DNA of 64,000 bases from Anthoceros angustus (lineage: Eukaryota; Plantae; Anthocerotophyta). The stretch spans positions 62,001-126,000 of the forward strand of contig MU008174.1 of the NCBI GenBank assembly GCA_010909165.1, written 5' to 3'. Of the stretch, positions 5,338 to 31,652 are shown in pieces. The translations under genes were made by a program, and so were the position numbers. Under the pieces are notes generated by a model that was given only the letters and a program-made list of their open reading frames with translations, ran no database searches and was not told where the DNA came from. Numbering within the stretch: the first letter of the stretch is position 1; the number at the start of each line of letters is the position of its first letter.

Positions 5338-5491
5338 AGATGTAATTATTTAATTGTTTATTATTTAATTGACCTGCACTTAATGCTTAAGTTTATGAGT
5401 CAGCCGCCCAGGTAGTTGTGCATAAAGTAGCGAGGCGACAAGCGACTTGTGTATCCANGTGTATTCTATCTCTACCCGATATATCGTGCAA

Positions 5492-5576
5492 AAGCCATAA
5501 ACAAATAGTATACAAGCCAATAATAGCTATGGTAAGCCATAAACAATTAGTATACAAGCCAATAATAGCTATGGTA
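5492..5576. repeat. 42-bp tandem duplication
   Basis: AAGCCATAAACAA(A/T)TAGTATACAAGCCAATAATAGCTATGGT occurs at 5492 and 5534. Confidence 0.9.
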
Positions 5577-6324
5577 GGGAAAAAGGTTGATATAGGAATT
5601 ATGGGTTGGTAGAGGAAGGAGACAATTAATGAGAGACAATTAATGAGCATGTTAGTGTGATATCCAGTTTGGGCGCCATTAACAATAGTTGTGAAGAGAG
5701 TGCAATGAAGAGCAATAGGAAAAACATTAACTAATTGTACTTCCAATGGGGTGTAATAAAGAGGGGGCGATAGAGAGAGAGGGTCCTTATTACGGTCATG
5801 TTGCATTTGCATGAGGGAATTCATAAACAATGCGTATGAGAGAGGGATGTAGTTAAGAGGGTGAAGTGGTAGGAGAGAGCAAGGTTCGTGTTAAGATTGT
5901 AGGCCCAATGCGGAAAGAAATGACAAACTTAATACTAAGCCTCCAAATGATGTTGCAAGTTACAAGTGTAACATAAAATTGCAACACGAATGTACATAGG
6001 GGCCATTTCTAGTAGGGCACGTTGGGCACGATGACTGCCATGGCTGATGGTGTGGTAGATGGAGGATCTGTCTGTGCCCATGGAACATCAACACCTTGAC
6101 CTAGCATTTGTGTCCAATATGCCCTGGAATACATGGAAGGGGATGGCATAGGGGTTTGAAGAAACTCGGTGAAGGACTGTGAAGTCCTTGTAGAAAGAGA
6201 ATCCTAGGAGGTTGGTTACATTGTTGCTCGCTTGATGTCGGTGCTATAACGAGTCCTTGGTACATCCCACTTGGTGGTGGTGGCCCATGGTTCACATATC
6301 GACCTTCCATAATGATTGCCTTTC

Positions 6325-6595
6325 TACCAAACTTGTACTTTCTTCCAAGGGCCTACTTGCACGCTCTTCCAACGCCACTGGAATGCTCCTCCAAGCCCAC
6401 CAAACTCAACGCTCTAGTCTCGCTACACTCTTTCAAGCCCACGCCAAACTTAAATGCTCTTCCAAGCCTCTTGCCCAAATTGGAATGCTCTTCTCGCCAC
6501 CTCCAAACTCGAATGCTCTTCCAAGCCCCCACCAACACGCCTTCCACCCTCCTACCAAACTTGAATGGGATTCCAAGCCCCTACTAAACTTGCAT
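6325..6595. repeat. Degenerate ~30-bp tandem repeat
   Basis: Recurring CAAACTTGAATGCTCTTCCAAGCCC-like units, with AATGCTC at about 6382, 6453, 6484 and 6512. Confidence 0.7.
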
Positions 6596-6635
6596 GTGAA
6601 ACTTTGTGAATTGCAACGAAACTTTGAAGAAGCTC

Positions 6636-9600
6636 GTTGAATTGCAAAAAGGAATAAAGCAATTAATTAAAAGTTGAATACAAAATTGTCTTAAGTACTT
6701 CATGTGAGTAGGTGTGACCATTCACCACTAACCAAGATATTAAATAACTAAATAATAAGCGGTAGGTTAATAACAACCTTCACATTCTAACACTCCCACT
6801 TAACCTGAGCAGGTAATTATTTATTCACCACTGAGTTCCAAGTAACTTATGGTAAATACGGATAAATCCGGATAAAAATACCGTTATGTACCCATGGGCA
6901 TGCGCATGTGGGGGTAATGGGGTTGTTAGATACCTTTCACCCCGTGAAAGCCGTATCCGCGGCGCTCAAAACACACCCGAATGGACTCGAAGAGGACGCA
7001 GAGCCATCGGCTCGACGGGGAGGAATCGGCCGGAACAATTAAGCGGCGGTGCGGATGAGTGTGGGAGGTCGCTCGCCTCGCCCAACAAAGCCAACAGCGG
7101 CTGGCGCCTGCGGCGATGGTCGCAGGAGAGACAGACCACTGCATGCATGGCAAACACGATTCGGTCGCCTCGCCGGGCCCCTGATGATTCATCTGATGGG
7201 GCGAAGAAGCATGCCAGTCGCCCCTCACCACTCAAACTTGTGCCTTGTTTACAGTGTGTTCTTCCCATGACCCATTGTAGCCGAATAAGACGCACCCTCA
7301 ACGAGACATGCAGGCGTGTGCGGGAGATATAGCCTCGTAGTTGAAATTGCACTATATCCATGCTTCATGTCCTATTTTGTTTTTGAAGTGCTGAGTTAAC
7401 CATTGCGTGTGTATCTATAGAGATGGAAGATGTTCCTCACGAAGTCACAGGCCCTCAAGACCCAACGGCGCCCAGGCTCCGGACCCTTCCAACTTTGAGT
7501 ATGTTGCCCCCATCCCGGTTATCCTCCTAGGTGACCTCCAGATACATGGCCAATGGAAAAAATCCATAGAGGTCCGATGCGTGTTGATCCCTTCATCCGG
7601 ATGTGAGATATGACCGAGACACTTTGAGGAGGACGGAGAAAAGATCCAGGGATGATAAGAAGAAGGATAGCGCCTAGGCGGGACATCCAAGACCTACACT
7701 CACGGATGCACAATGGGAAGAGTGGATAGTGCAAGCGTCTTAAGGTAAATATAAAGAAGGTGGCTTCAAAATTAGCTAAATCTGCACTAGTACTTGTTAG
7801 TTGAAAATACTAACCTCGATCAATTACTTGTCGATTCACGATTTGATTTAACCTAATGCTTCATCCACTGACAGAATGTGCAGACAACTTAACAGAAAAA
7901 AAAATTTGCACTGACCATGGATGCCTTGAAACATGTAAACAAACTCAGGTGGCGAAAACTAGCAAGCTAAGGAGTTAGCAGCTAGTAAAACTCCAAACTA
8001 AAAAACTATGAAATTTTATCAGAGGCCACCCACGGTCCAAGTAGTAAGACTGTTAAATTAGAAATGAAACTCCCTAAGACCTAGAGACTCTAGGTGCTTA
8101 AAGTGCTTAATTTTAGGCAAAGCCTTAGTTAAAATATCAGCAGTGTCATCTTCTGTGCTGATATACTTAATCTTTACTATTCCTCTCTCGGCAACATCCC
8201 GGATGTAATTGTGATAGAGCTCTATATGTTATGTCCTAGCATGAAACCTAGGGTTAGCAACTAAAGCTATAGCACCCATATTATCACAAAACAGACTAGT
8301 AGGACTGGCCAGGACCGATTTACGTAATCAAGAAATTGACGCTCCCACTCGCCTCCTTGCAGCATCCGCCGTGGCTTTGTACTCGGCAGAGAAGACAAAG
8401 CAAGAGAAGCTTGTTTCTAACTCCAACTAATGCACCCGAGGCCAAGGAAACAATAAGCAAAGACTCTTTTCAAGATTGGACGCCCAATCAAGATCGGCAA
8501 AAAAGAGGTAAAAGTGACTTGCTCCCACTGAATATTGTAAACCATAGGAAATAGTGCCCTTGATATAACGATAGATACGCTTAATGTCCAATGTGGCGTG
8601 TGCTACTTGAACTGCGAAACCATACTAACATCGATGGTCGTCGAGTCCAATTGGCTGTGAAAATCAAACAACTAACAACCTCGCATAAGGAATGATGCTA
8701 TATCTTTAAGATCTCCGCACTGAGGAGCTTGATCTATACTAAACTTTTCCCCACCGCAGAGGGAGTCGTAACAGTCCGGCCTCATCCATATGAAAGCGCT
8801 TAAGAATTTCTTTGATGTACTTAGTTTGATGAAGAATAATTTGACTGCACGCAAAAAACTGGATGCCGAGATGTAATACAGATCCTCTTGATCCCATTTC
8901 AAACTCAACAAGCATAGTCTTAACTTTCTAGTTGTGGAGTACTATTACGAGAAGGCAATCATCCACGTAAAGTGCGAGAACAAAAGACCACCTGGGGTAA
9001 AACACATTGTTGTCATGGGATTGTAGAAAACCTAGCTTCTTCAAGTACTTCACAATCCGCTTGTACCACGCTCTTGGACTTTGTTTCAAGTAAATAGTCT
9101 TTAGCTTGCAAACTTTCCTAGCCCATTTTTGTTGATGAAGCCTCGTTGCATGTATAAAACTTCTTCTAACTCCCCATGCAGAAAGCGTATATACGTCCAT
9201 CCGTTGGACTTCAAGATCATACTGTAGCCATGGCTAGCAACATACGGACAGAAGGTGGCTTCACAACCGTGAGAAGGTATCGCCATAATCAATACCGGTA
9301 TTTGACTAAACCCCTCGCAACCAAGCGTGATTTATATCTAGCCAGCTCCATCCGACTTGAGCTTGGTCTTGAAGACCCACTTACGCTAATAGGTTTCCGC
9401 CGTGGAAGATCAACAAGTTCCCAAGTGTTATTCTTCATAAGAGAGTTGTACTCATCATCAATCGAAATGCCAATGGTGTCCATCCGTCCGTGATTGCTTC
9501 CTCATAGGATGCGGATCCGCCTTACATCGCATATGTAGGCTAGAAACATGGGCACCATGCTTCAAATCCACAACTGATAAGGAGGCGCCCCATTTCACAG

Positions 9601-11450
9601 ATCTCGCCCACGAGCGTGATACCGTGAACAGTGGTCTCTGCGAGGTGGAGAGGGAGGCCTCCACCGCCGAGATCCTTCCGGATCATCAAGCTGAAAATGA
9701 CCAACACCATCCATTGATGCATTCTCAAGGTCAAGATCTGCTTTCTTCCCTTCCTCATGTTGAGAAGTAGTCAAGATTCTAGGTGTGCTCTCACCATCGA
9801 AAATGGATCAAAGAAAAACAGCGGAGAAGAATCAACATGTGGAGGACTAGGTGTCATCTTGAATTTTCGCCACCGACTCATGTGAAGGAGAAAATATAGA
9901 CCTGAATCTTCTAATGTTAGGAGAATGTAGTTCACAAAGGTGACACTACGAGCAAGTGTGAGTTTCCTGGTCTTAGGGTCATACAACTTGTAGGCTTTAC
10001 TTTCCTCAGAATAGCCTACAAAGAAATAGGGCCTGGACCTATCATCTAACTTCCGACGTTTGGACACAGGAATGAACACAAAAGCAGGAGAGCTAAAGAC
10101 ACGAAGATGCAACAAACTAGGTTTCTTGCTCCAAAAGGCTTCAAAAGGGGTTGCGTCAGGTAAAGAGGCTGTGGGAACTCTGTTTAAGATATAAGTAGCC
10201 GTCACAATCGCCTCTGCCTAATATCCCTTTGGAAGTCCTGACTAAGAGAGCTTACTACATGTCATCCCCATCAAAGTCTGATTTTTTCTCTCACTCCATT
10301 TTGTGAGGAGTGTATGGAACCGTGAGTTGCCTTCTAATTCCATTTTTCAAAAAGATCATCATACTTTGCCCAAGAAATTCACCACCATTTCAGACATTTA
10401 ACTAACTTTCGCTTTGTTGTTGAACAGGGAATCCAAGCGCTATCTTATCAAATGCCTCACTCTTCAACTTCAAAGGAAATGTCCAAGTGAATCGAGAATA
10501 GTCATCAGAGTTAGATAATACCAAGCGCCACCAGGAAGAGACTTGCGCCTTGCCGAATATCAAGATGAAAGCTCAAGTACCTCAAAGGCCCTAGTAGCAT
10601 CCTTGTTCTTGAAAGGTAATTCCTTGGATAAGATACATGATTTGCAAGCATGAAGGTCCTTGAATTGAGCTGGAAGTCTCTCCTTGTAACACCATACATC
10701 AAGCTCAATTTCACCTTGTTGATATGACCAAGGCGAGCATGCCAAAGTTCAACGCTTTTAAAATGTATCATTGAACTTGGGACAAGACTTATAGTCGAGA
10801 TAAAGTTCATTAACCAATACACCTCTTTCTATGCACGATTAGGGCTGGAAATTTTATACAAGCGAGAATTCAAATCAACCCAACCAAAGCCGAATTGTGT
10901 AAAGATGTTACCGCTAAGGCAACCACTCTTCTTCCAATTTCCTGGAAGACTGTACTTATCTCGTGTCCAGGCTCAACTGATTCATGTGCAAGTTTGCGGA
11001 GGAGTGGCATGCCTCATCTACTAAAAGCTTCAAGGCTAAAGCGAGTGGTCCTTGGTGGCCCTTGGCGTTGGTGTTATAACGTCTTGGCCTTCATGATCGT
11101 AAGGTCTCATCCTTTCTCACCTAGTTGCAATTTGGGCATATGGCTATTGGGGCTTAAGCGATTCAACATCGCTAGACACCATTTTGTCGAAATATGTCTT
11201 TCGAGGAAACCGCCAACACATCCTTAGGTCAAGACTCGGCTACCAACAAGTGGGACCAGATTTTTCAGGCTCTTACTCGATATGCGCCAACTCTCGGATT
11301 TCTAAACTCGGAGGAACTTATCTCTTACTTCAACGATTGGCTACTTTTAGTGCAGTTCCTTAGCAAAGCTAGTCTTGATCTTTGTTTGATCTACTTTCTT
11401 TGCTTTTACGCTCCCCAAATGTCACTTCATTCATGTTCTTGATTCATTAC
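6636..11450 (-). mobile_element. Degenerate Ty1/copia retrotransposon, minus strand
   Basis: GAG-pre-integrase LWHARLGHIN at ~10740, integrase (TATYILNRVPT, FFVGYSEESKAYKLYDP), RT (NNTWELVDLP, RYKSRLVARG, LKQSPRAWY, LYVDD) and RNase H at ~8070-8300. Minus-strand PPT AAGTGGGAG at 6793-6801 is followed by TG at 6792. Both outer boundaries are approximate. Confidence 0.85.
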
Positions 11451-12641
11451 GGTGTCATAGCCTCGCACATATGCCTAATGATCTATAAATCAATAAATAA
11501 AATAAAGCGGCGATGAGGTAGACGCCAATAAAGAGACGGGCTAAGGCGAGAACGAAACTAAAAATAGTGATAAATGGCCTGGATGTCGGGCAAGTGTTAG
11601 GATCGAGCAGCACCGCTTGTACAGCCCTATCGATGTCGCACGAGTCTAAATATATAGGAACAAACGCAATGAGGCGCAGTGAAGAAGAGGCAGGTTAAGG
11701 CGAGAAAACTAAAAATACGAGCATTCTTTTGGGAGTAATCATGAGCGACATAATGAGCTTTGTCGTCTTCGATGTACAAGCTACATGAGATATGAAGGAA
11801 TATGAAGAAAAGACTCAAAGAATATACCAAATACAGGGTTGGTATGTCGAATAGGTATTTAACAGCATAATGACAGCCATTTTTGGGTTATTTTTCAAGC
11901 AAAAAATTTGTGAAAATTATTTTGGATTAACTTTTTGGTTCTCCAGCTGAATCTCTATTCAACGGGCTATGACATGCTTGATCGAAATGCTTGCCCTTAA
12001 ACCGTGGGAGGTTAGGTTAATGAAGAAAGTTTTTTCTGGTAGTATTATGCTTTATTCTAGAGATCAATATTTGTAATTCCACATAGGGCACCTGATGGGA
12101 CAGCCTCCCGGCGTAGTAGAACTCTCTAAAGAGCGTTCTACTACGCCTCGAAGCTCTCGTTAATTTTTACTAGCTTATAGAGTGCTCTCCTGCGCTTGAA
12201 ACAAAGCATTATATTAGTATATTAACATAAAAGATATTTTGGCAGCCTTGGGATCTTGGGATGAGAGGCAAGCGACAAATAATACTCGATTATGAGGAGA
12301 AAAGGCAACAAGCTTTATTTGATCGTGAGAGAGACATTGAGCGCCGCTGCCACTAAGAAGAGGTATGGTAAGAAGGGGTGTATCAAAGAAACCCCGCATT
12401 CACCACCCATGACCCGTAGGACCCATACAAGACTAAGTCCTTCCATCAAGACCAATTTCTAGAAGGAGGAAAAGAGTCCCAGGTAGGCGCTACGGCCCCT
12501 AGTCACTTGTCGATGGTCTATCCAGGACTTCGCCGGATGTCCCACCCAAGAAGAGAGGAAAAGAAATGGACCTCTAGAACAAAGGAGTGAGCAATCGAAT
12601 CCTCGATTCAAACAGCCGCAAAAGGTTCTTCGAAGCCCTCT

Positions 12642-12795
12642 TAAGCTCGGTAAAGAGTACCAAAAACTTTGCCTTACACACTGCTGTCATGCAGTTCTCC
12701 ATTTATATCCACCATGGCGGTGGCTCAGTACATCGTATCGGGCAAGGTATACATATGTGTCCGTATGTTGCCTAACACTCGTATATCGCCTAACA
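12642..12795 (-). repeat. 3' LTR of the gypsy element
   Basis: Shares AAGAGTACCAAAAACTTTGCCTTACA, TTCTCCATTTATATCCACCATGGCGG and GGCAAGGTATACATATGTGTCCGTATGTTGCCTAACACTC with the 5' LTR. Confidence 0.88.
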
Positions 12796-15700
12796 ACTCA
12801 CCCGGGGATGAAGTGGTTTCGGCCTCGAAAACGGGAGGCATGGTAGGCAGCAAGGCGTCGTCACAATGGGAAAGGTTGCGGCGGCTCCCGGTGGCCTCGA
12901 TAGAGGATAGCCCAGTACGAGATATTCAAAAGTTTGTGGTGCGGTGTTTGAGGATGCGGTCCACTTCATACATGGGTTTCCGAAGTCCAAGACGGGTGGA
13001 GGTCGGGAAGGGAGGGGCCTAGGCGGCTTTAGCAGGAAGTGTGAAAGGCGTTGTGGCACTTGTAGGAAGGAGGAAGGGCGAGGCGATAGGGCGGGGCCGA
13101 TGACTGTAATACGGAAAAGGTCCGATCCATCGATCGGCCAATTTCCGGATCCGATACCAAGGAGTGGGGTAGAAAAGCGAGTAGACAATAGCACCGATCG
13201 CCGAGAAAAAATGTGGTCGTCGATGGCGGTTGGTTTGTAGGATCTGCCGATTTTGTGCCTCAAACACATGTTGCGAACTTGCTGAAGAACTGAGCCTGTT
13301 GGAGGAAGTCCATGGCCGCGGTCTTGATCGGCAGCACATGTTAACATGGTCCTGGGATGAAATCCATAAAGAGCAAAAAAGGGTGTTGTTCCTGTGCTGG
13401 CATTCTTAGAGTTGTTGAAAGCAAACTCTGCTAAATGTAGATATTGCTCCCATTTTTCCTGCTGAGTACTGACATATGCTCGAAGAAGATCTTCAATGGT
13501 TTGAATAGCCCGCTCTGTAGCTCCATCAGTCTCTGGGTGGCTTGCTGTTGATAGATACAATTTAGTTTGTAGTCCGCGATGCATAGCTTGCCAAAACTGA
13601 GAAGTAAACCGGGGTCCCGATCACTTACTATCTTTGTGAGGCAAGCCATGGAGCTAGATATAACGAAGGTATAGCTCAGTGCATCCATCGCTGAACATGC
13701 TTGTAGTGGGGGCTAAGTGGATCATTCTCGTAAGTTTGTCGGTAAACACAAGGATTGCATCATATCCTGGGGTCAAAGGTAAACCCACTACGAAATCAAG
13801 AGTGACTTGCTCCCACGGAAGTAAGGGAATGGGCATAGGCAAGAAGACCGTACCTTAGTCCGGGAGCCTTGATCCGTTGACAAATGCCACAAAGATGGAT
13901 CCAAGTAGTGACATCATCGCCATTTTCGGCCAAGAATACTGCACTGCAAGTTGTAAAGTGTACGGTGAATGCCTGATGTCCGCAGAGGGAGTCTCATGAG
14001 CCTCCAAATAGTATAAGACGAACATGTGGTAGTGGAGGAACATAAAGCCTACTCGAAATGAAGAAGACTCACATCGATTGAGTCCATGCCCAGATCCGTA
14101 ACTTGCAGAGCATCCTTAGCAACAGGTCTGCAGCAAGTAAGGAACTCATCACCGCTTTCCTTGTACATTAATAGTGTAGTAATAGTTGTTAAACGAGACA
14201 GGCATCCGCCACACGATTCTGCTCACCAAAATATGTTGAATCGAAAAGTTGTATTGCTGGAAGTGCTCCACCAACAGCTCGCTTCCTACTCAAATGTGTT
14301 TGAGTTTGAAGATATTTCGTGGCTCGTGATCCGTCTCTAAAATGAATGGGGTGCCTCCGGACACCACCTCCATTCCTTGAGAGCTAAAACTGTGCCAAGG
14401 TTTCCTTTTCATGGGTGGTCCGATTAAGTTCAGCCCCTTTCAACTTGCGACTAAAATATGCTATAGGTTGTCGCCCATGACCTATCTTCTTTTAACCACT
14501 GATGGCAACATCAAGCATCGTAGTGACTATAAAGGAAATCTTTGGGTCGGGTAGATGAGCACAGGCGAGATTAACTTGAGGTCTTCAAATGACTCCATTG
14601 TTGAGCCCGCCATGTCCACATTGCGCCTTTTGAGTTAACCCGTGGGGGGGCCGATGGGAAAAGCGCCTATAAATTTCACGTAGTAAGATACTAAGCCGAG
14701 GAAAGATTGAACGTCCTGGACAGATCTAGGCACTGGCCATTTTTGTACTACACATACCTTTTTAGGGTCCACTCGTATCCCATCTGCTGAAACTATGTGT
14801 CCAAGGTATTCTATGCTGGTAAGCAGGAATTCACACTTCGTTTGCTGTATGAATAGCTTCTGTCTCCGTAACCTAAGCAGGACTTCTCGTAGTAAAGTAA
14901 TATGCTCCTCTACTGTCTTGCTGTAGATGAGTATATCATCTAAATAAACCAACACCCCTTTCCTGATTAAATCACGCATAGTGTCGTTCATCGATTCTTT
15001 GGAAAGTGCTAGGAGCATTAACCAAACCAAAACTCATGACTAGCCACTCATAGTGCCCATCCCTCGTGTTAAAAGTCTTCTCGATGTCTTCATCACGGAT
15101 TTGGTGAGGCTGCCAAATCTAACCGTGAAGTACTTGGCCCCTTGCAATTGCTCAAGCATCTCATCAATCCGTGGTAGGGGTAGCAATTTCGTTTGGTGAT
15201 ATTGTTGAGTCCTCTATAGTCCATGCACATCGTAGTCCCTCTTTTTTTGAAGAGAATAGGGGCCCCACGGAGACTTTGAAGGACGGATGAATCCTTTCGC
15301 AAAGGGCTTGGCATCGAGCTTCCTCCAATTCCGTGGGTGATAATCGATACCTGAGCGGTATGGGGCTTGATGCCCGGTGAGTCGACTCTATCTTATGATC
15401 CACACTCTGAGGGGAAGCCTTGGTGGCAACCCTTGAACAACCACATCTTGAAACTCCAGCAGTCCGAACTTGACCTCTTGAACCACAAGACCTTTCTTAT
15501 CTACAACATCTTCTTCCCCGAAACGCCACAACTTCATTATCCGTTGTTGGTGGTGCAGCCCAAGCGACTCATGAGCAGCTAAAGCAGTGCTCTACCCGCA
15601 TCTCTCCTTCCGGAAATATTAGGATTACGTTCCTCCAACCACTCCATCCCCAAGATTACATCACAATTAATTGGCAGCGGAGTTATTGTACAGCAGAATG

Positions 15701-16935
15701 TAATCGGCGTCCTATCCTAAGAGGTACACACTTACTTTGCGTCCGGGCGGTAGCTCCCCATTCGCGAAGTGACAAACCATTTTCTTGTGTCGGTCCAGGT
15801 TGGGCAAACCGTGTTGACATGAAATTACAACTTGCTCCACGTCCACGAGGATGGCACACGGCCATCCACACTCCCACGTAAGAGATTCCAGTACCCTCGT
15901 CTTGGATGGGGCTAATCTCAGGCTATGGCCGCTTCCCTCGTGGCCATGCCTACGTTTTCCGTCTTTTGGGTCTCCACCGCCATAGCTACTATCTCATTCA
16001 AGTGCTCCTGCCGTAGTGGTATTGCGCTGTGGCCTTGCCTCCGAGCCACTGTCCCTATGCGGAGGCACACACTAGCTTGTGCCCCATTCGTTACAATTAA
16101 AACATCGGCCTCGAAATTCTTGAATCCGCCCAAGCTCCATAGGCACCGCCCGAACTAGGGCTAGAAGTCATCCTCCACGTAGCCTCGGTCCCATCCCTTA
16201 TCTCGCATCGCATCGTAGTAAAGGGCATCTGCTGTCGCTAGTGTCATTGCATCCAATGTCTGCATCCCGTAGTTTCACCTCTTGCGAATCAGAAACTTCA
16301 ATCCTCGAGTGTAGCGGTCTCGTTTCGCTTCACTCATATCGGGTATGGCCATCACCAGCTCAAAACTCACGATTGTATTCAACAACACTCTTCCTCCGCA
16401 CCGCCACTAATTTATCTCAACCTCCGACCCTCCGTGGAACAAACGTGGTTCGGAGGGCTATCAAAAACTCATCTAACTGTGAAGTCGGCAAGCTCCCTTG
16501 CGCTGGACTGATTCTGGCGTCAGAGCCACCAAGTAGACGCCCCTCGCAAAAATCCGCCGATCTACTGCAGAGGTGGGGGCACCAACCGAGGCGCACATAC
16601 CTTTTCACTTGATCAATCCTTATCCACCGCCTCGGCTCCTCTTTCCCATCAAGTTCTCGCCTTGATCCCTTTACCTTTTCCATACCTTGAAGCCGTGACA
16701 TAGGGTCTGATGGATTTGCAAGGCCGCTGTAACGCTTGCTCAAGGTGAGCAATCCGCTCACTCGATGCCCGCTCCAACCGGGCAATCCTTTCATTGAGGC
16801 AGCGGCTAGCCGAGCATCCACGCCAGCTCCCCCCGCTTCAAATTCCTATTGCCGGCGTGTCGACGCCCTTGGCCAACTCCTTCGTCCGCAACCACGCCCG
16901 CACGCCCCGAACGCTGGACGAGGCTCGATACCGCC

Positions 16936-17091
16936 TAAGCTCGAGGCGGTGAAGAGTACCAAAAACTTTGCCTTACATACCGTTTGCCGCAGGTTCTCCA
17001 TTTATATCCACCATGGCGGCTCGTATAAAGACATCGACGGCAAGGTATACATATGTGTCCGTATGTTGCCTAACACTCATATCGCCTAACA
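16936..17091 (-). repeat. 5' LTR of the gypsy element (~155 bp), with adjacent PBS-like site
   Basis: Begins TGTTAGGCGATATGAG on the minus strand and matches 12642-12795. Minus-strand GGTATCGAGC at 16923-16932 resembles the tRNA-iMet PBS TGGTATCAGAGC. Confidence 0.85.
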
Positions 17092-17582
17092 TGCCGGGTG
17101 CAAGCAGAAAATGCCGGGCGGCGTACCAGCAGCGGGACGCTGGAGGAGGTCGGGTGTCCGAGCAGAGGAGAGGACCGTGGTCGCCATCCGAGTGACAAAT
17201 GATCTCAACATTCTCATCACAAGTCTTGCTCGAACTAGTTGCTAGTCCCGACAGACTCACCAATAAATGCATAACATGTGCTATCTCGCCTTGTAGGCCC
17301 GGATGATATCACCGCCATGAGAGTGGAGAGGCTGGGCAAGCAGGCGCCACAGTAAGTAGGTTGTTCTAGCTCCTCCGGGTCTTCTGCTCATCCATAGGTA
17401 CCAGCCATCCCCAATCTCATCTCCTCTCCCGATGCACATGGTATACAGAATGTAAGGATTCCAAAGAATCCACTTCACGTTTTGTGCCAAGTGTGGTAGC
17501 GAAAGGATGCTCGTGTGTGTTTGATGGACTCAAGTTTGTTGTGCTTAACTCAGCCCATGCGGTTGCGCTTTTACAATCGCAG

Positions 17583-18038
17583 ACATTGCCTATCTTGATG
17601 GCAAGCATACCGTATGTCCAAATTGTGGTCTCGTAGCTAACTGCGTGCTGGGGTTTTTTTTTCTTCTCAAGTGTTGAAACTGAACTTCTGGGGAGACTGC
17701 TGGACAGACATTTTGAGGGCCTTGAGACTCTCGTGCGGATTAATGACGCTCATGTTGATGAGGAAGGCCGTCCCTACAAGAGCATCAGGTTTGCTTGGAT
17801 CCACTAAACTCCAGTTCTTGCACAGTTTAGGGGATGGCTCACAGCTTATGCTATGACTTAAGGTCACAGAGCATGGTCATGCAGTGCTTTAAGGCTATGT
17901 GGTTTTCACGATGTTCTTGGTTGTACACTGGAAGAGAACTAAGTAGCCATAGTTTATGTTGGAAGCAGGATAAAGCACACGTACATGGTGGATGATCCCT
18001 TCCATGATCCTCAACTTGCTAGCCTAATACCCGAAAGG
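17583..18038 (+). pseudogene. CYP59: Intron-containing internal fragment of a CYP59/PPIL4-type cyclophilin gene
   Basis: Three exon-like pieces translate to DIAYLDGKHT, EGLETLVRINDAHVDEEGRPYKSIR and IKHTYMVDDPFHDPQLASLIPE. This matches the end of the CYP59/PPIL4 cyclophilin domain. No N-terminus or RRM was seen nearby. Confidence 0.8.
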
Positions 18039-19159
18039 TTTTGAGCTCAAGCCCCGGAGAGCTCAATCCGCCATGATTCCCTCAAATTCCGTATCCCGAG
18101 GCCCTCAAGTAGCCAAGTGCCACTCAAAATATAGTACCCCGGCTTCTCATGCTCAACCGGTGGCTTACTTGATGACACAGCCTACGGGAGAACCTAACCT
18201 CTAGTGGTAGGCGGCGTACCATCATGCTTTGCATTTCCTTTACCTCCTGCAATAGGCTTTGCAGATTCGCATGTTGTACCACTCTTCTCCCATGCTTCGC
18301 TTGGATGCTTCACACGTGCAGCGAGGATGAAATGAGCGGACGGGCCAGTGAAAATTCACCACGGGATTCGTGATATGTCAATGCCACGGGCACATGTAGT
18401 TCCAATTAAGAAAATTCACAGGTCCGAGATCAAATGTTGCTTTTATTAACATTAATTTTTCCATCTTTCATTCAAAAGCGTCGCCATACTACAGAACGAA
18501 CGAACTACTTTACACTTTTATATAGCGTATTTAAATAAATTTTATAAATAAATATCATTGTAAAAATAAAAGAAATGCTAAATATTATAACTTATTCAAT
18601 CTAAACATTCCAACCTTTGGGTACTAACATGGTGGAAAAGTACAAGGACTATAATGCATTGAATACTTCGGCTTGCACATATGCATCACACCACTTTAAG
18701 TTAGACACATTGATATCCACCTTGCAAGTTAAACTAAACACAAAAAAGTCGCTTATAAAAAGTTGAAAAGAAGATTTTTTCTTGAAGCAAGAAGCTTTTG
18801 TAAATACTACCTGCTATTGACAAGATAAAGAAAAAGATGTATATTATAATAAATAAGTGCTAAATATATTTCTACATCTTAAGTTTTTCTTGTGAAAAAT
18901 TCAAAGGCTCAATTACTCTAATTTACATCCGCTTTTGACAGTAATGTACATATCTATCAAGAACCAATTACTTTACTTCATCAAATTGCAAGTATCTTTT
19001 ATACCTCTCAACAAAGTGGGAGGTACATACCTAGGTAGTGCTTTTCTTGGATAACTATCATATTCGTTAATGGCAATAATCTAAAACTAAATAAGGAAAC
19101 TTGAACACAAAGAAACAACTCCAACTAACATCACCCATGATACCAACTGTTTCACCCCA

Positions 19160-19757
19160 CTATTGCGGAGGTTGGGCTACGCGAGACCCAAAGCTATCCA
19201 TGGAGTTGTGGTTAGTCAAGGATCGCGATGTCTGGGTGGTAGGAAATGCAATAAGGGTGAATTTTTGACCCAAAGAACAGTGGCCTGGTATTCCACAAAT
19301 GAAGTAGTAGGGTCCAGGCTTGGTAAGAGTAATAGCTGTCTTTCCACTACCATGTGTCGCAATCGCATTGTTGGTGTTACAACTACTGTACTCCTCTTGT
19401 GAGCTTACTTGCACCACGCTGTGAATCTCTCCCACATATGTGAATACTGCATACAAGTGACTTGAAATATTTTAATAAGTTGAAGCAACAATATAGCACA
19501 TATCCAAATGTAGGTTGATTAAGGTTGGGAAGTTTGATGTTCTGTGAGTCAGGAAGATTGGAATGCTTACATAGTGTGTCTCCCACATGGTATTTATGAC
19601 CAGAGGCCCATGAAGTGTAGTTCACATTAGCGAGAATGGGCAAAGTCCACCCATCCTCGTCACCCACTGCAAACTGTGTTGGAGCTACTGCACCTTGGAC
19701 AATGTTGATTGCAAGCAAAAGGCATACTCCCATACAAAGCTGGCATTTCATGTCCAT
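19160..19757 (-). CDS. Phytocyanin (stellacyanin-type blue copper protein), exons 19757-19571 and 19446-19160
   Basis: Signal peptide followed by VGDEDGW, NYTSWA, YHVGDTL|LFTY, HSV and YYFICGIPGHCSLGQK. Copper ligands are H, C, H, Q. The phase-1 GT-AG intron at 19570-19447 splices in frame. Confidence 0.92.
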
Positions 19758-19859
19758 CTTGCTAGTGCATGAAATAGAGGTTACTACTATTGAACAATCT
19801 CTTTGAAGAAACCCTTCAAAGTTTGCAGCTAGCTAGGAAGTTGCAGCAACAGAAATGAG

Positions 19860-20086
19860 CTCACATAACTGTTGAAATGAGAGGAACATGCCACTTATGC
19901 CAAAAGAAAGGCAGCATGGCAGTTACAGTAGCCTCCTCGCATAACTGTTGAAATAAGGGGCCAAATGCCACTGATGCCCAAAGAAAGGCAACATGGCTGA
20001 TAGGGTAGGCTCCTCACATAACTGTTGAAACAAGGGGCCACTTACGCCAAAAGAAAGGCAGCATGGCAGTTAGGGTAGGCTCCTCA
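19860..20086. repeat. Three copies of a ~70-77-bp unit directly upstream of the phytocyanin
   Basis: CTC(A/G)CATAACTGTTGAAA...GCCACT...AAAGAAAGGCA(G/A)CATGGC...GTAG(C/G)CTC occurs three times. Confidence 0.9.
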
Positions 20087-20251
20087 ACTGCTGCTCAAAA
20101 CTGCCAGTTCATGGTGTGAGGACAGCCACCAAACGTTGTCACTCAATCTTGAAGGTAATGCCTCTCAACCATCATCTTAGGTTGTGGAGCGTGAAAAGCA
20201 GAGATAGTTCGCTTGACACTTGAAGAGATAGGGAGCATGAGCATGGAAGCA

Positions 20252-20410
20252 CAAAGGGACAACTTTAGTACCAAAAGACATTGACGGATATAGATTAAAG
20301 TACTTTTGTTTATCAATATGGCTTTATGCAAAAGGGGACAACCTTAGTGCCAAAAGACATAGACGGACATAGATTAAAGTACTTTTCTATATAAATCTGA
20401 CTTTATGCAA
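20252..20410. repeat. ~80-bp tandem duplication
   Basis: GGGACAAC.TTAGT.CCAAAAGACAT.GACGGA.ATAGATTAAAGTACTTTT...CTTTATGCAAA occurs twice. Confidence 0.85.
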
Positions 20411-20694
20411 ACAGATAGTCCTACGTCTACCATTTTCTTGTGTTTATCCTACGCTTAGGTATATTCTACTTTATTTTCTTGTATTACCTATTAGGTTTAT
20501 AGATAGGTATATTCAGCTTCTTTTTCTAGTATTTACCTATTAGGTACATATGTACTTAGGTGTATTTAACTTTTAGACAATAGAAAATACAGTTTCAAAT
20601 TTATTTTTTGTAGGTGGGAAGTCTTTTATTTCTAGGTTTTCAAAGAAATAAGCTAGGGCACGTACCTGATTATTTTAATTTTATAAATTTAGGT

Positions 20695-21529
20695 TTATAT
20701 ATTAATCAAAAGTTACTAATAAAATCAGGCATTCTTGTTAAAATACCACTAAGTCATGATAAGCTAAACCTGTATTTTCAGGATCAACTTCTTTTGCTAC
20801 TTGGTCTGCTAACATGCTAAGTTCATTTTCTTCAAGTCCTGCTGAGGAAGGAACTCTTTTCAACAAATGAAGTGAAGGACGAACCATAGGTGTTGAACAT
20901 GTGACAAGATCGATTCCATGCATAATGTCCTCTGCACATATTGCATGCGGCATGTGAAAATGACTATCCTCATTTCAAACTAGTTTTAACAAGTTGGTGC
21001 AAAAACATTTCTCCCTACTAAAATTACCTTTGCCAATTAGATCATCTCCATCAAAATCCCATATTGCAAATGCCCATATCATTTTATTTCGCAATGTGTG
21101 GGGAAAAAGCGATATCATATTCAAAAACTTCAAGGTTAAAACTCGACATGTCCTCACTAAATAAATCACATATTCTTGATTTAAAAGGATTTGCACGCAA
21201 TTCCTCCACTTGAAGCAAATCATCTTTGTTGATTATATCTCCACCGTAGCACTTATCATCTTTGCATTCCCAAGATCATAAGTGTTAGATTTGTAAAACA
21301 ATTCGGTTTGATGTTGCTGGTTTGATGGACTTCATTTTTACCGTTGTACTCTCGCAATTTTATTGGATTTTATGATCCGTGAATGCTTACCTCGAAATTT
21401 ATTGTACAACTTTGTAATTTCTGATTTACTAAAAGGGTACTTATTCTTGAATCTATCTATATCTTCTTGAGGCAATACCCTCAATATTCTTTTGGAGGTC
21501 TTGGGGCTTTATGTAACACCTCTCCCCAT
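20695..21529 (-). CDS. CIB-like (calcium- and integrin-binding family) EF-hand protein, exons ~21529-21391, 21259-21028 and 20931-20695; disrupted as assembled
   Basis: Manual splicing gives MGRGVT*SPK...PFSKSEITKLYNKFR | ...VEELRANPFKSRICDLFSEDMS/..KFLNMISLF..NKMIWAFAIWDFDGDDLIGK | EDIMHGIDLVT...EVDPENTGLAYHDL/GILTRMPDFISNF/INI*. Both GT-AG introns are phase 1 and join in frame. There is one early in-frame TAA and several small deletions, so it is either a pseudogene or carries consensus errors. Confidence 0.8.
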
Positions 21530-22523
21530 CGCTTTTGTTATTTCCATACTTGTTTGCAACAAGAAATCATTGGAAAAGCTAAAGAGAGTGAAGGAGAGCT
21601 GTGAGCTCGTATAATAGAATATTATATATAATATATATACATATATATAATACCCTTAAGTTAAATATATCTAATTATTTTTATATTTTTAATTTTATGA
21701 TAAATTATAGGTAAATATATGAATCTAATATTAAATAAAAATGACATTTAAGGTACTATTCCAAACTTGACACGTTTTATTTTTGGATTCAGGTTGAATT
21801 TTTATATAAGCAAGCACTTGTACATAAGCAAGAATTTGTATATAAGAATGACAAGATGACATGCATAAATCGAGAAATTTTTCAAAGTTTTTTATGCGCC
21901 TCTATGGTTTAGTGGTACTGCTTTTGTGGAGAGAAGTTAGTTGTTTTTAACCTAATGTTTTGGATACAATTGATTAATTGTTACATTACTTTTTAGCTAC
22001 TATAAATGTATGTCTAGTAATGATGTACACATGTACGTGTACTCTTTTCTTCCACCTAATTTACTGCACTTTTGTCCCACCCTTAGTGAACATAAATAAA
22101 GTTGCTGTTGTTGTAGAGAGTCAATCTTGTAAAATAATGGTCCGAGTTCGCAGTGGAGGTATTCTCCTATTTTATCTTCACCTTTGTAACCTAAATGCTC
22201 AATCTTGTTTCCATAATTGTAGATATCCCAATGTTTCATCCTCATCATTGTAGGCTATATCAAAAATCATTTTTTGGATTTTTTTCTTTTTGAATGAAGA
22301 GAATATGAGACGAAAAAAATATATAAGCAAACCGTCCATGTCTATATAATAATAAATTACTATATTAATTTAACTATTAAAATAAATACATATAATTTAT
22401 TTTTAACTTTATATATATTATAATGGTTTTTATAATGCAACAATAATATCAATGAATGTAGATTGTGTGTTTAAATTTGCTTTTCTTGTATAAAATAAAA
22501 TGGAAAAAGGAGTTCTACTTTTG

Positions 22524-23132
22524 TCAAAGTTTATTCAATTTGGTTACAACTCCAACTCTTAGACATTGGTCAAAAGATCCAAATACACATAATCCTTCTT
22601 TGTCGGGACTCCAACTAAAAGAGCAAATTGGTTGTGTTGACAACGATTTGGATGACAAGAGATTACAACAACCCATTATCCCATACTCTTTTCCATTGTC
22701 ATCTTTCATGGATCTTTTATCGATATGAATATTTATATAGATTTAAAGAACCATCACCACCCAAAATCATAAACACCTCTCTATTTTGAGGTAAATGCTT
22801 AACACCCCAAACCGTGGTGCCATGCTCCAAGTTTTGTGTTAAGCTAGCAAACCCTTTTCAAAGATGATAAGTTCTTACATCATAGACATTGAATTGTGCT
22901 TCTAACGTAGTAGCTACAATTTTGTTCATCTTGATGTCTTTACGATCAAATTGCACACCACAGACTCCATTTTTCATACTTGTCTCCCATCGGATAGCAC
23001 CTGCTCTAAGGTCAAATAATTTCACATCCCCATTGTCGTAGCCAGCTAAAACACAGCGTTCTTCATCATTGTATGAGTTTCCAAATGCAACGGCCCAGCA
23101 ATCTCGTGCAATATCTTTATTTTCGTGGTCAA
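22524..23132 (-). CDS. WDR92: WDR92/DNAAF10 dynein axonemal assembly factor, 3' half only (cut at N 23133), with small frameshifts
   Basis: Diagnostic WDR92 sequence: [104 protein letters not shown]. Confidence 0.92.
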
Positions 23133-23661
23133 NCACCGACAGGCCTGCATCCACTCCCCGCAGTAGCACGCTGCCGTCTCGACCTGCAGCGAGGACATGC
23201 ACGCCATGCGGGTGGCGGGATCTGGACGCCGCGCGCATGAGCGTTGCATCGATCGAATGCCCCGCCTCGCCTCGGCTGGCCTCGCCTGCCGTCGCCGGCG
23301 TCTCCTTTCTGCCAGCTGCCGCCACCGGCTGACGCCCCACCGCATCAGCCAGGACAGTCCATCCCGCGCCCTGTGCGGTCGGTCGGTCATGTGACGAGAC
23401 TGCAGCTCCAGTCGTCTCTCTCGCCGGCTCTCTCTCTCTCTTTCCCTCCCGCCTCCTTATCCTCTCCAACCGGGCTCTCCGCTCTCTCCCGTATTTTAGT
23501 ACTTACGCTGCGGGAGCACAGAGTGAACTGAACTTGAAAGGTCTCGCGCGGGCTTGGAGCCTCACTCCGGGCTCCCAGCGTGAAACAAGGAAGGAGACGC
23601 GAATTCTGATTCGCGAATCGGGAGTCGCGAATTCTTTGTGAATCGGGAATTGTGATGCGCG

Positions 23662-25520
23662 ATGGAGCTCCTGCCTCCCAAGAATCGGGCCAACCACGTG
23701 GCGCTCTCACCGATCTCCTTCCTGGAGAGGACGGCGGTTGTGCATCCGGATCGGCTCGCTGTCGTCTATGGAAGTCGGAGATTTACCTGGCTCGAGACGG
23801 AGCGGAGGTGCCGGCTTTTGGCCTCGGCGCTGCTTGCGCACTCCGTGCAAAAGGGAGACACTGTGAGCATGTGTTATTGCGTTTTTTTTCTCCGGTAGGA
23901 GGGGATGGACGGATGTGTTTGATGCACGGGTTTCGATGATGGTGATGGCCAGGTTGCCGTGGTGGCGCCGAATGTGCCGGCGTCGTATGAGGCTCAGTTC
24001 GGGGTTCCCATGGCGGGGGCCGTGCTGAATGCGATCAACATCCGGCTGGATGCACGGACGATCGGGTTTTTTCTGGTGCATGCGGAGGTGAGGGTTGTGG
24101 TGGTGGATGTGGAGTTCTTTCCTTTGGTGGAGGAGGCGTTAGGGTTTGCCAAGGAGAAGGGGGAGTATCGGGCGCCGTTGCTGGTTGTGGTGGAGGATGA
24201 GGAGGGGCATGGGGATAACGATGGGAGGTTGGGGCGGGCGTTGGGAGCGGGAGCTGTGGAGTATGAGGAGTTTCTGAGGAGAGGGAATGCAGGGTTTCGG
24301 TGGCAAGGGGTGGAGGATGAGTGGGAGAGTATATCGTTGTGCTACACTTCTGGCACAACGTCCAGTCCCAAGGGAGTGGTGACGAGCCACAGAGGCGGGT
24401 ACTTGGCGTCCCTGAGCAACATTCTGGATTGGAGGGTGCATCATTATGCTGTTTACCTCTGGACTCTACCGCTATTCCACTGTAATGGGTGGTGCTACGC
24501 CTGGGTTGTTGCAGCAGTTGTAGGGACCAACGTCTGTTTGCGGCAGGTATGTGGGTGTTTTGGGTTTCTTTGTACGAGACATGGCTTGACGAGGTGGTTG
24601 AAGTTTTCTGTTTGCCTCAGGTCACAGCCAAGGGGATCTTCTCTGCCATAGCCGAGCATGGGGTGACACATTTTTGTGCAGCCCCTGTGGTGCTCAACAC
24701 CATCATCAACTCGGCTCCCCATGAGAGGCAGAGGATCAAGCCGGGGGTGGAGGTTATGACTGCAGGGGCAGCACCACCGGCTTCTGTTCTTGCCAAGATG
24801 GAGGAGGACGGATTCAGAGTTACCCACACTTACGGGCTCAGCGAGACCTACGGGCCCTGCACGGTGTGTGCCTGGAAGCCCGAGTGGGACTCGTTCTCTC
24901 TGCAGGACCGAGCTCGGCTTAAAGCCCGGCAGGGCGTGCGGTACACTCTCCAGGAGGGCCTGGACGTGGTGAATCCGGACACCATGGTCCCGGTGCCTGC
25001 GGATGGGAATGCCGTGGGCGAGATTGTGATAAGAGGAAACCTTGTGATGAAGGGGTACTTGAAGAACCCAGCGGCCAACGAGGAATCCTTCAGAGGTGGG
25101 TGGTACCATACTGGGGACTTGGCTGTCAAGCACCCGGATGGCTACGTTGAGATAAAGGATCGGTCCAAGGATATCATCATCTCTGGAGGAGAGAATATCA
25201 GCAGTCTGGAGGTGGAGAGTGCGCTCTACAGACACCCGGCGGTGCTAGAAGCCTCCGTTGTCGCCAGGCCCGACGATCAATGGGGGGAGTCTCCTTGCGC
25301 ATTTGTCACGCTCAAGGAAGGCTCTCAAGGTGGAGACAAACTGGCCAACGACATCATAGCATTCTCACGGACCCAGCTCCCGCGCTACACGGTCCCGCGA
25401 ACTGTCGTGTTCGGCCAACTCCCCAAGACTGCTACAGGAAAGATACAAAAGCACATTCTCCGAGACAGAGCAAAGGCTCTAGGTCCGGTGCTTAAACAGG
25501 CGTTGAATAGCAGGCTGTAG
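23662..25520 (+). CDS. AAE7: Peroxisomal acyl-activating enzyme, AAE7/ACN1-like acetate/butyrate-CoA ligase; exons 23662-23862, 23953-24546, 24621-25520
   Basis: ANHVALSPISFLER, the AMP-binding motif YTSGTTSSPKGV, THTYGLSETYGP, DRSKDIIISGGENISS, LPKTATGKIQK and a C-terminal PTS1 (SRL). Two GT-AG introns join in frame. Confidence 0.92.
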
Positions 25521-29794: not shown

Positions 29795-31652
29795 TTATTG
29801 ACTAGGAGCATATGTTCGGGGTCTCTCCATGTGCACCGATCTTGATGACTGGGAGAAGATCATCCTAACGTGCTTGAACACATTCACGCCCAACAAAATT
29901 CTACATCCAACAGCCCTTATGGCCGGTACTTCGCCAACAGCGAACTGAGCACCTTTGATTGTGAAATCAGCCCCACCAGCAGCTCCTGTGCCCGTCTTCT
30001 CAGTGATTATATCGACATCTATTAAGGCCCCGGAGAAGGCCATAGTTCCCACTTGTCCAATGCCTCCACCGCCGAGAGTGGGTCGTGTGCCATTCTGATC
30101 CCATGGTTCACACGTTTTCAGTTAGACAGTGCTATGCTTCATGACTCCAGCAGCATGCAGGTGTCAGCTACTTACGAGAATATGTTCTGGTACACCAGCA
30201 AGTCTGGCGATGTCAGGGCTTGCGACGCACAAGGAGGAGCCAAGATCCAGCAGGGCCATTTCAGGGGGTGCTGTGCCAAGTCTAACCTGCTTGCAGACGA
30301 GGAGTGGCTTGTTAGAAACCGAGCTCAGCTGGAAGATTTAAGCACAAGTAGCAAGATGTCGCCCATGGATTGCTTACCTCGACCGACAGTATTCCCAACA
30401 CCACAACTGATGAGGATAGCTTCTCGAGACCTTGCAAGTCACACTCTCCTCTGCTCACAGCCCCAGCCGAGTGAAAGATGATCTGGTTCCTGGGGTTGTC
30501 GAACTCCACATCAACCTGTGACAGCATGTTGAGCCCCATGATGCCTGCTGCAGCAGGATCCCAGCCTTGCAACATACTTTCGTCCATCAGGAGCGCCTGA
30601 CATGCCCAGACACCATCCAGTGAAATGCCACCAAAGCACCATATCCACAAACCTTGCCAGGCAAAGGAACTGGTGCATGTGGCAACTCACATCCACGGAG
30701 CTCAGCACATGATCTCCGAGTCCCACTTTCCCAAGTGCCACACTGAGAAAGCTCTGAGTTGTGGCCCCTCCTCCGAACAGCCCGACAGTCCTATTGGCTG
30801 GAGTCGGTGTCAGCCCCAACTGACCATACACAATGGATGGCACTATCAGCGTGATGGTGCTGGCTGTGTCCAGAACGAAGTTGAACGGCCCTTGCCCGTT
30901 GATCTTGAGCGGCACAAGGATGTAGTCCTTAGGTGAAGCCTGTGTGCTCCTCAGCCGTGTCATGGGAAACCGAGCCAGCGGCCTAACCCCATTCCCATCC
31001 CTCCCCCCTCTCCTGCCCTTGCCTAGCCGAGCAGTTGCCAGCCGCACCACCAGCTCCTGCTTCTCAAAACAATCTGCAAATGAGACGCCTGCGAGACACA
31101 TCCAGATCTAAATACCAGCACACACACACAAAACCCACCAGCTGTGGACAAACACAAGGCATGCCATGGTCCTCACCAAGCACCATCAGCTCGTCCTTGA
31201 TTGCACTGGCCCGCATTTTCTCCACCTCCTCGATTGCATTCTGCAAATTGCATGGTTCCCCCCACAGCCAACGCGGAGAGGTGAAGTGCCACCAAGCTTC
31301 TGCACTCTAGGAGAAGCCATCACACATTCACACATTGCATCACACCCAGCCTCACCACCCCAACCCACAACCCCAACCCACCCGCCACCCACCACCCACC
31401 ACCCCACAACCCACAACCCACAACCCACAACCCACAACCCACAACCCACAAACCGACATAGCTGGAGACTTTGCGTGCCTTGAGGCTCAGGGAATCCCTG
31501 TCTTGGCCACTTGCTCGGAGCTGCAGCGTTCGTGGAGAAAGAGCCTTCCAACCCCACGGCCTGTCATCCACGCGACCCAAGAAGCCGTTCCGTCTCTGCA
31601 GCCTGTACAGCTGCTGCCCCCCAGGGGAGGCGAAGCAGACCAGGGCTCGCAT
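29795..31652 (-). CDS. Tandem two-domain retropepsin-like (clan AA) aspartic protease with probable plastid transit peptide; exons 31652-31458, 31240-31177, 31088-30691, 30596-30378, 30286-30176, 30094-29795
   Basis: All five GT-AG introns join in frame. Domain 1 reads ILVPLKINGQGPFNFVLDTASTITLI...GLFGGG...AGIMGLNML. Domain 2 reads MALLDLGSSLCV...LGGGGIG...ILLGVNVF. The N-terminal helical motif is IKDELMVLGVSFADCFEKQELVVRL. The start codon is tentative. Confidence 0.82.
31362..31452. repeat. (CCCACAA)n / (TTGTGGG)n heptamer tract in intron 1 of the protease gene
   Basis: About six to seven consecutive CCCACAA units at ~31403-31452, with degenerate copies to the left. Confidence 0.9.

What the first reader, a model, noticed from the sequence alone, without database searches (positions are those of the whole stretch)
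20695..21529. Hidden CIB-family calcium sensor gene in a land plant
Seen: a three-exon minus-strand gene with an MG start, ELRANPFKSRICDLFSED, AFAIWDFDGDDLIGKED and a C-terminus RMPDFISNF-INI*. Known: these blocks match animal CIB1-4 (CIB2-type ELRENPFKERI..AFSED and APDFLSTFHIRI). They do not match plant CBLs, which end in an FPSF motif that is absent here. Animal CIB2/3 are TMC channel subunits, and CIB1 and CIB4 are needed for mouse spermatogenesis. Inference: this is a non-CBL calcium sensor retained in plants with flagellated sperm. I know of no characterised plant example.
Basis: partly seen in the sequence, partly recalled or inferred. Interest (0 to 1): 0.85.

Follow-up and report, generated by a model that had tools for sequence, protein, structure and literature searches.

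The report
Green-plant CIB calcium sensor gene
This land plant (probably a hornwort) has a real gene for a calcium-binding protein of the animal CIB family, whose members are helper subunits of the TMC hearing and touch channel; such genes run from green algae to ferns and Ginkgo, are named only by automatic database annotation, and may partner the plants' own unstudied TMC channel.

Summary
The gene is real and CIB-like, but not unique to this genome. Full-length relatives occur in liverworts (Marchantia Mp1g13580), mosses, lycophytes, ferns, Ginkgo, Klebsormidium and chlorophyte algae. No named hit is an angiosperm, conifer or Chlamydomonas. They form one clade (97/95). Their profile ranks animal CIBs first (112-149 bits), then calcineurin B (87-102) and CBL (48-56). 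CBL hallmarks are absent.

The clade differs from animal CIBs: only EF3 is canonical, EF4 is degenerate, the EF1 insert is missing and the MG start is not conserved.

The window copy has a stop and several frameshifts. Listed differences from a relative's contig reopen exon 2 and most of exon 3, so assembly error is likely (about 70%) but not proven for the source organism.

Best mechanism: auxiliary subunit of plant TMC, whose published range matches. A sperm role is untested, and no spliced transcript was seen. RefSeq already auto-names the Selaginella protein CIB3; I found no paper on plant CIBs. The scan noted this stretch before (s1-655663) and a CIB-type gene elsewhere in this genome (s1-680469).

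The parts
21391..21570 (-). Exon 1 (first two helices).
   Evidence: 14 bits to green profile; relatives X7 and X14 show +5/-1 gap letters here
21260..21390 (-). Intron 1 (GTAAGC donor; no canonical YAG acceptor in the window)
   Evidence: position within a base of the phase-0 intron of Marchantia and Selaginella; X7 joint 21263-21394 with 134 other letters, X14 loose end
21028..21259 (-). Exon 2: degenerate EF1, ELRANPF motif, degenerate EF2 (SED), canonical EF3 start DFDGDDLIGK; broken by small deletions in the window
   Evidence: PDB best hits CIB1/CALM-1/CIB2; X7's listed indels (+5 then +6) give one open frame
20932..21027 (-). Intron 2, phase 1, GT..TGCAG
   Evidence: same place and phase as in Marchantia, Selaginella, Sphagnum and Klebsormidium
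20695..20931 (-). Exon 3: end of EF3, green-clade insert, degenerate EF4 (DPENTG-LAYHD), C-terminal RMPDF..NF helix, stop; frameshifts near 20750 and 20708
   Evidence: 50.6 bits to green profile against 3.7 to animal CIB and 2.2 to CNB; +1 at 20750 in X7 restores the frame; the break near 20708 is not resolved by listed rows
22517..23132 (-). Neighbour: 3' half of a WDR92/DNAAF10 gene, cut by the N at 23133 and also frame-broken
   Evidence: human WDR92 residues 164-245, E 9e-39; on the same X7 contig as the CIB gene
5459..23132 (.). Block bounded by single N letters that holds the gene; lower GC (0.43 against 0.50)

Best explanation
The locus is this plant's member of an old green-lineage branch of the CIB family, inherited vertically (shown). 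The breaks in the window are mostly long-read assembly errors in a poorly polished contig (inferred, about 70%). The protein is a CIB/calcineurin-B-fold sensor-adaptor with no catalytic part. EF3 is its one canonical Ca2+/Mg2+ site (sequence-level inference), and a conserved hydrophobic groove closed by the C-terminal PDF..F helix takes an amphipathic target helix (inferred from animal structures). Its most likely target is the cytosolic helix pair of the single plant TMC channel, which it would stabilise or traffic and tune according to divalent cations, as CALM-1 and CIB2/3 do in animals (inferred, not shown).
For: Profile against PDB: CALM-1 149, CIB2 127, CIB3 124, CIB1 112-115, calcineurin B 87-102, CHP 64-71, NCS 50-58, CBL 48-56 bits. 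The AlphaFold model of the Marchantia ortholog (pLDDT 83) has TMC-bound CALM-1, CIB2 and CIB3 as its top Foldseek hits. Diagnostic columns: 12 shared with animal CIB, 0 with CNB. The green clade is monophyletic at 97/95 with bryophyte, lycophyte and fern groups, and introns are shared with land plants. Groove residues equivalent to CIB2 F70, F179 and F183 (CALM-1 F84 and F197 face TMC-1 helices, PMC9605866) are kept in 22-25 of about 25 green sequences and mostly differ in CNB. All five taxa with a published single Tmc (Coccomyxa, Klebsormidium, Marchantia, a moss, Selaginella; PMC7003098) have a CIB-like hit at genus or class level. Earlier notes report TMC genes in this genome (unchecked). 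X7's indels restore exon 2 and most of exon 3, and 6 of its 7 other listed exon-3 substitutions are silent.
Against: No binding, expression or localisation data. CIB2 residues that bind TMC1 site 1 (Q17, F21, D90, D93; PMC11861898) and the C-terminal R186 are not conserved in the green clade. Ferns and Ginkgo have the CIB, but TMC has not been reported there and I could not search for it. Animal CIBs bind many partners other than TMC. The tree had only three groups (no CBL, CHP or NCS sequences were available), so it cannot by itself place the root. X1, the nearest holder, does not list any X7 insertion in identical form, and its 930-nt contig spans 932 window bases, so an intact frame in the source organism is not shown.
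Confidence: 0.5

Rival explanations
1. A CIB kept for sperm or flagellar function (spermiogenesis or Ca2+ control of swimming), lost together with motile sperm. This can be true alongside the TMC reading if the channel works in sperm.
For: The land-plant range of named hits equals the lineages with motile sperm, including Ginkgo. The gene lies beside the dynein assembly factor WDR92 here and in organism C. Mouse CIB1 and CIB4 knockouts are male-sterile (PMC11900603).
Against: No named hit in Chlamydomonas or other Chlorophyceae, while coccoid Coccomyxa and Chloropicon have it (that they lack known flagellate stages is from memory; cryptic stages are possible). WDR92 is not a neighbour in Marchantia, Selaginella, Sphagnum, Klebsormidium or Coccomyxa. 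The closest animal matches are CALM-1 and CIB2/3, not CIB1 or CIB4. No expression data.
Confidence: 0.3
2. This particular copy is a real pseudogene (or a decaying duplicate in a sex or accessory chromosome segment), and the working CIB gene of this genome is the one noted on another piece.
For: A stop and at least four frame breaks in the window. X1's listed rows do not show the X7 insertions, and its length does not allow all of them unless a repeat was skipped. The block is AT-rich and holds retroelement remains.
Against: X1 has a single contig over the gene, not an exact match to the window. It differs by 16 gap letters but only 10 substitutions and sides with X7 and the family consensus at 20750, 21086-21090 and 21180-21182, which is error-like. 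WDR92 next door is broken in the same way. A tandem repeat at 58762-62991 has a second copy about 5% shorter. Substitutions against organism C are mostly silent.
Confidence: 0.25
3. The green clade is a separate offshoot of the calcineurin-B/CHP/CBL superfamily that only resembles CIB, and it serves a kinase or phosphatase partner.
For: It lacks the 11-residue EF1 insert of animal CIBs, and algal members keep a CNB-like EF1 loop. Language-model neighbours were led by a 'calcineurin subunit B' cluster, with scores too close to separate families. Klebsormidium's protein is annotated as a PP3 regulatory subunit.
Against: All 26 green sequences score higher on the animal CIB profile than on the CNB profile. 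12-to-0 diagnostic columns, and the C-terminal P[DE]F motif in 21/26 green, 14/15 CIB and 0/8 CNB. The CNB sample was nearly all fungal.
Confidence: 0.1
4. The N-bounded block is contaminating animal, fungal or protist DNA.
For: Composition differs from the flanks and the block is joined by single N letters.
Against: Intron positions are shared with land plants. The closest proteins are liverwort, lycophyte and fern. In run X7 the block and the flank right of the N have the same depth (136 against 127). Four related organisms in nine studies hold parts of the stretch.
Confidence: 0.02

Closest known systems
C. elegans CALM-1 and vertebrate CIB2/CIB3 (auxiliary subunits of TMC-1/TMC1/2; PDB 7USW, 8TKP, 8XOQ, 6WUD)
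   Same: Fold (TM about 0.66-0.70 by query), E.r.NPF..RI..lFSEDG block, DFDGD EF3 loop, C-terminal PDF..F helix, groove aromatics; best sequence and structure matches.
   Different: EF4 loop is 11 residues with Pro at position 2 and no acidic position 5 in all 25 green sequences that reach it; no EF1 insert; an extra 10-25 residues after EF3; MG start not conserved; terminal HIRI arginine and site-1 acidic residues replaced.
Human CIB1 (calmyrin) and CIB4
   Same: ELKANPF-type motif and overall fold; best hit for the exon 2a piece.
   Different: Lower profile score than CALM-1 or CIB2/3; no integrin partner in plants (own knowledge); myristoyl switch not evident. CIB4 was not compared.
Calcineurin B / CHP
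   Same: Same superfamily fold; 12-residue EF1 loop without insert, nearly canonical in algal members.
   Different: Lacks CNB's canonical EF2 and EF4 loops; has the CIB-type C-terminal helix; 0 diagnostic columns shared.
Plant CBLs (SOS3/CBL4, CBL2)
   Same: Plant four-EF-hand sensor relay of the same superfamily.
   Different: No 14-residue EF1 loop, no FPSF motif, no MGCxxS/T; only 48-56 bits; Marchantia's three CBLs are defined by those features (PMC10953335).
Selaginella moellendorffii XP_024517853.1 ('calcium and integrin-binding family member 3', RefSeq automatic name) and Marchantia Mp1g13580
   Same: Orthologs: same clade, same two intron positions.
   Different: About 40-70% identical over the matched pieces; not described in any paper I found.

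Membership tests
CIB (calcium- and integrin-binding) family | Best sequence and profile matches are CIBs rather than CNB, CHP, NCS or CBL | tested here: met
CIB (calcium- and integrin-binding) family | CIB fold with C-terminal helix (PDF..F) over the hydrophobic groove | tested here: met
   (model is of the Marchantia ortholog)
CIB (calcium- and integrin-binding) family | Monophyly with animal CIBs against all other superfamily members | tested here: inconclusive
   one search had only green, animal CIB2/3-type and CNB rows; CBL, CHP, NCS and calaxin sequences could not be fetched
CIB (calcium- and integrin-binding) family | EF3 canonical metal-binding loop | tested here: met
   DFDGDDLIGKED in the window; D[FY]DGD in all green sequences aligned; binding itself not measured
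CIB (calcium- and integrin-binding) family | EF4 canonical metal-binding loop (animal CIBs) | tested here: not met
   11-residue DP...G loop in all green members that reach it; this makes it a variant
CIB (calcium- and integrin-binding) family | N-terminal myristoylation glycine (CIB1-3) | tested here: inconclusive
   MG at 21529 may be internal; 3/26 green against 14/15 animal sequences start MG
CIB2/3-CALM-1 TMC subunits | Conserved TMC-contact residues | tested here: inconclusive
   groove aromatics kept (F70, Y115 as W, F183); site-1 residues Q17, F21, D90, D93 and R186 not kept (PMC11861898, PMC9605866)
CIB2/3-CALM-1 TMC subunits | Physical binding to a TMC channel | not testable with these tools
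   no plant TMC sequence was retrievable by reference; no complex prediction tool
Plant CBL | 14-residue first EF-hand loop | tested here: not met
   EF1 aligns without gap to the 12-residue CNB loop; feature from PMC10953335
Plant CBL | C-terminal FPSF motif | tested here: not met
   0 of 26 green sequences; absent in the window
Calcineurin B | Four canonical EF loops and CNB-specific residues | tested here: not met
   EF2 and EF4 degenerate; 0 against 12 diagnostic columns

The most novel reading that the evidence does not exclude
The TMC-CIB channel module of animal hearing and touch is older than animals. Green algae and seed-free plants keep a minimal one-TMC, one-CIB complex with a single metal site, possibly working in motile sperm, and both genes were lost together in Chlamydomonas-type algae, conifers and flowering plants. 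Marchantia would then offer a haploid, editable system for TMC gating.
Probability: 0.4. Interest if true: 0.8.

Novelty: new variant of a known kind. Interest (0 to 1): 0.55.

Why it matters
Surveys of plant calcium sensors list calmodulins, CMLs, CDPKs and CBLs, and a 2025 CIB review describes the family as conserved from arthropods to humans (PMC11900603). A green-lineage CIB clade adds an overlooked sensor class and offers a candidate partner for plant TMC, whose function is unknown. If the two bind, the core of the hair-cell channel complex dates to early eukaryotes and can be studied genetically in Marchantia or a moss. The window's own copy adds a probable hornwort member and is otherwise a damaged sequence.

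Tried and rejected
Pfam on the window pieces gave no EF-hand hit because the fragments are too short; full-length homologs do hit EF-hand models. The top hit of the representative search, a 2175-aa spider repeat protein, was rejected as a repeat artefact.

Ten literature searches found no paper on Mp1g13580 or on plant CIBs (the library is incomplete). CBL, EF-hand and ciliary-sensor papers read do not report one.

Conserved CIB-WDR92 or CIB-TMC linkage in five other genera: not found. A spliced transcript: not found. Run X14 pieces continue into intron sequence, so they are DNA or unspliced, and no holder is on record as RNA. Homopolymer statistics inside against outside the block: uninformative.

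Strand asymmetry of X1 transitions is 12:0, or about 8:0 after removing alignment artefacts. It hints at single-read error, but X4 shows 7:0 outside the block, so I treat it as weak. The metagenome scan added only two algal-type loci.

The joined-model search and fold were left out, so the tree and structure use intact homologs.

Full report
Observation. They lie in two frames. There is a TAA at codon 7, a frame change between the SED and FLNM motifs, a two-codon gap before TLRNK, and frameshifts near 20750 and 20708. The exon 2 pieces hit human CIB1 (E 1.4e-4), worm CALM-1 and CIB2 ahead of calcineurin B in the PDB.

Relatives. The exon 2a piece retrieved proteins of Calypogeia, Diphasiastrum and Marchantia (Mp1g13580). 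Searches with the Marchantia protein and with a 15-sequence profile added Riccia, Sphagnum, Ceratodon, Selaginella, Ceratopteris, Adiantum, Ginkgo, Klebsormidium, Coccomyxa, Trebouxia, Myrmecia, Chloropicon, Pyramimonas and Bryopsis. No named hit is an angiosperm, a conifer or Chlamydomonas; the search is word-limited and many hits are unnamed, so absence is suggestive only. RefSeq already names the Selaginella protein 'calcium and integrin-binding family member 3'. All five window pieces fall in order on the green profile and score best there. Intron 2 has the same place and phase as in Marchantia, Selaginella, Sphagnum and Klebsormidium, and intron 1 lies within a base of the Marchantia and Selaginella intron. 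The gene is therefore native to a streptophyte plant. That the host is a hornwort is inference: runs of about 100 Mb, GC near 50%, no close match to sequenced mosses, liverworts or Selaginella, and earlier notes. The single-N joins would fit an assembly like that of Anthoceros angustus (Nanopore, Pilon, SSPACE; 119 Mb assembled against a 107 Mb estimate; PMC7027989), but the species is not shown.

Family. The green profile ranks CALM-1 149 bits, CIB2 127, CIB3 124, CIB1 112-115, calcineurin B 87-102, CHP 64-71, NCS 50-58 and CBL 48-56 (a calmodulin-CNB fusion chain scores 117 by length). A model of the Marchantia ortholog (pLDDT 83) has TMC-bound CALM-1, CIB2 and CIB3 in its first nine Foldseek ranks, with CNB close behind; the Atlas shape search agrees. 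Where animal CIB and CNB consensus differ, the green consensus equals CIB in 12 columns, CNB in 0 and neither in 7. The CBL hallmarks (14-residue EF1 loop, FPSF; PMC10953335) are absent. In the tree the green sequences form one clade (97/95) with liverwort, moss, lycophyte and fern groups. Only three families were in it, so it does not test rooting against CBL, CHP or NCS.

How it differs from animal CIBs. EF3 is canonical. EF4 is one residue short, with Pro at position 2 and no acidic position 5, in every green member that reaches it, whereas animal CIBs bind cations at EF3 and EF4 (PMC11861898). The EF1 insert is missing, and algal EF1 loops look CNB-like. A green-specific insert follows EF3. 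Only 3 of 26 start MG. Groove aromatics that face TMC helices in CALM-1 (F84, Y129, F197; PMC9605866) are kept as F, W and F. The CIB2 residues that hold TMC1 site 1 (Q17, F21, D90, D93) and R186 are not kept.

Is this copy intact? One 3802-nt contig of a relative (run X7, organism C) covers the CIB gene and the WDR92 gene upstream at one depth. Its listed indels in exon 2 (+2, +1, +2, then +3, +2, +1) and +1 at 20750 give an open exon 2 and an exon 3 open to the ISNF motif, both matching the family consensus. Six of seven other listed exon-3 substitutions are silent (the tables are truncated). The nearest holder (X1, organism A) has one contig over most of the gene, with 10 substitutions and 16 gap letters against the window. 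It sides with X7 at 21180-21182 (A, not K), at 20750 and, by an equivalent alignment, at 21086-21090. However, none of X7's insertions is listed for X1 in identical form, its contigs are net shorter than the window, and tiny X1 contigs at 20811-20872 differ only by gaps. X1 therefore looks indel-noisy itself and does not prove an open frame. The neighbouring WDR92 is broken in the same way and cut by the N at 23133, and a tandem repeat at the window's end has a copy about 5% short. I put assembly error at about 70%. In exon 1, X7 and X14 carry a net +4 bases between 21478 and 21597; an ATG at 21570 lies 92 bases above the conserved frame, so it would be in frame, and the MG start remains open. 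No spliced RNA was seen: X14 pieces run into introns.

Mechanism. Shown: family, range, gene structure, EF-hand pattern. Inferred: a one-site Ca2+/Mg2+ adaptor that grips a target helix. For the target, the published green taxa with a single Tmc gene (Coccomyxa, Klebsormidium, Marchantia, Physcomitrella, Selaginella; PMC7003098, also PMC12806904) all have a CIB-like hit at genus or class level, the closest animal proteins are the TMC subunits, and earlier unchecked notes report TMC genes in this genome. I therefore favour an auxiliary subunit of plant TMC (0.5). The sperm reading (0.3, not exclusive) rests on the land-plant range, on mouse CIB1 and CIB4 (PMC11900603) and on the WDR92 neighbour, which is not conserved in five other genera. 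TMC in ferns and Ginkgo could not be tested.

Verdict. A real gene of a green-lineage CIB clade, auto-annotated in databases but not described in any paper I could find. It is a new variant of a known family, and it yields a clear test of whether the TMC-CIB module exists outside animals. Interest 0.55.

Noticed in passing
window 22517-23132 (-): 3' half of WDR92/DNAAF10, cut at the N at 23133 and frame-broken; adjacent to the CIB gene also in organism C, but not in five other green genera.
   Followed up: yes
window 5459-23132: Block between two single N letters with lower GC. Relatives' contigs right of 23133 continue into other sequence, so the join is a scaffold join. The block is plant DNA at normal depth in organism C.
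   Followed up: partly
Atlas cluster, row 8: A chordate cluster named DNAAF10 carries EF-hands plus WD40 (578 aa), probably the vertebrate calcineurin B (PPP3R1)-WDR92 read-through (own knowledge). An EF-hand gene beside WDR92 here is probably coincidence.
   Followed up: no
window 58762-62991: Tandem repeat of about 2.1 kb whose copy spacing shrinks from 2161 to 2057, so the second copy is about 5% shorter with few substitutions; fits deletion-prone long-read sequence.
   Followed up: partly
window 22077-22114: A 38-bp stretch matched by many unrelated contigs in all four runs: a short conserved high-copy element between WDR92 and the CIB gene.
   Followed up: no
window 19383-19757 (-): Phytocyanin (plastocyanin-like domain) gene start, with three 70-77-bp repeats upstream at 19888-20110.
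   Followed up: no
window 23959-25520 (+): Acyl-activating (AMP-binding) enzyme gene with long open frames, right of the N join.
   Followed up: no
window 30511-31101 (-): Aspartyl protease (Asp_protease_2) domain, part of the spliced retropepsin-like gene noted earlier (s1-655695).
   Followed up: no
L001 14328-18642: In Marchantia the gene downstream of the CIB is a centrosomal CEP44-family gene; not seen beside the CIB in the other loci.
   Followed up: no
P0016, P0019, P0064: Several algal CIBs begin with a cysteine cluster (MVGCC, MSLCCC), a possible S-acylation anchor in place of myristoylation; the window's ATG 21570 would give MISCC.
   Followed up: partly
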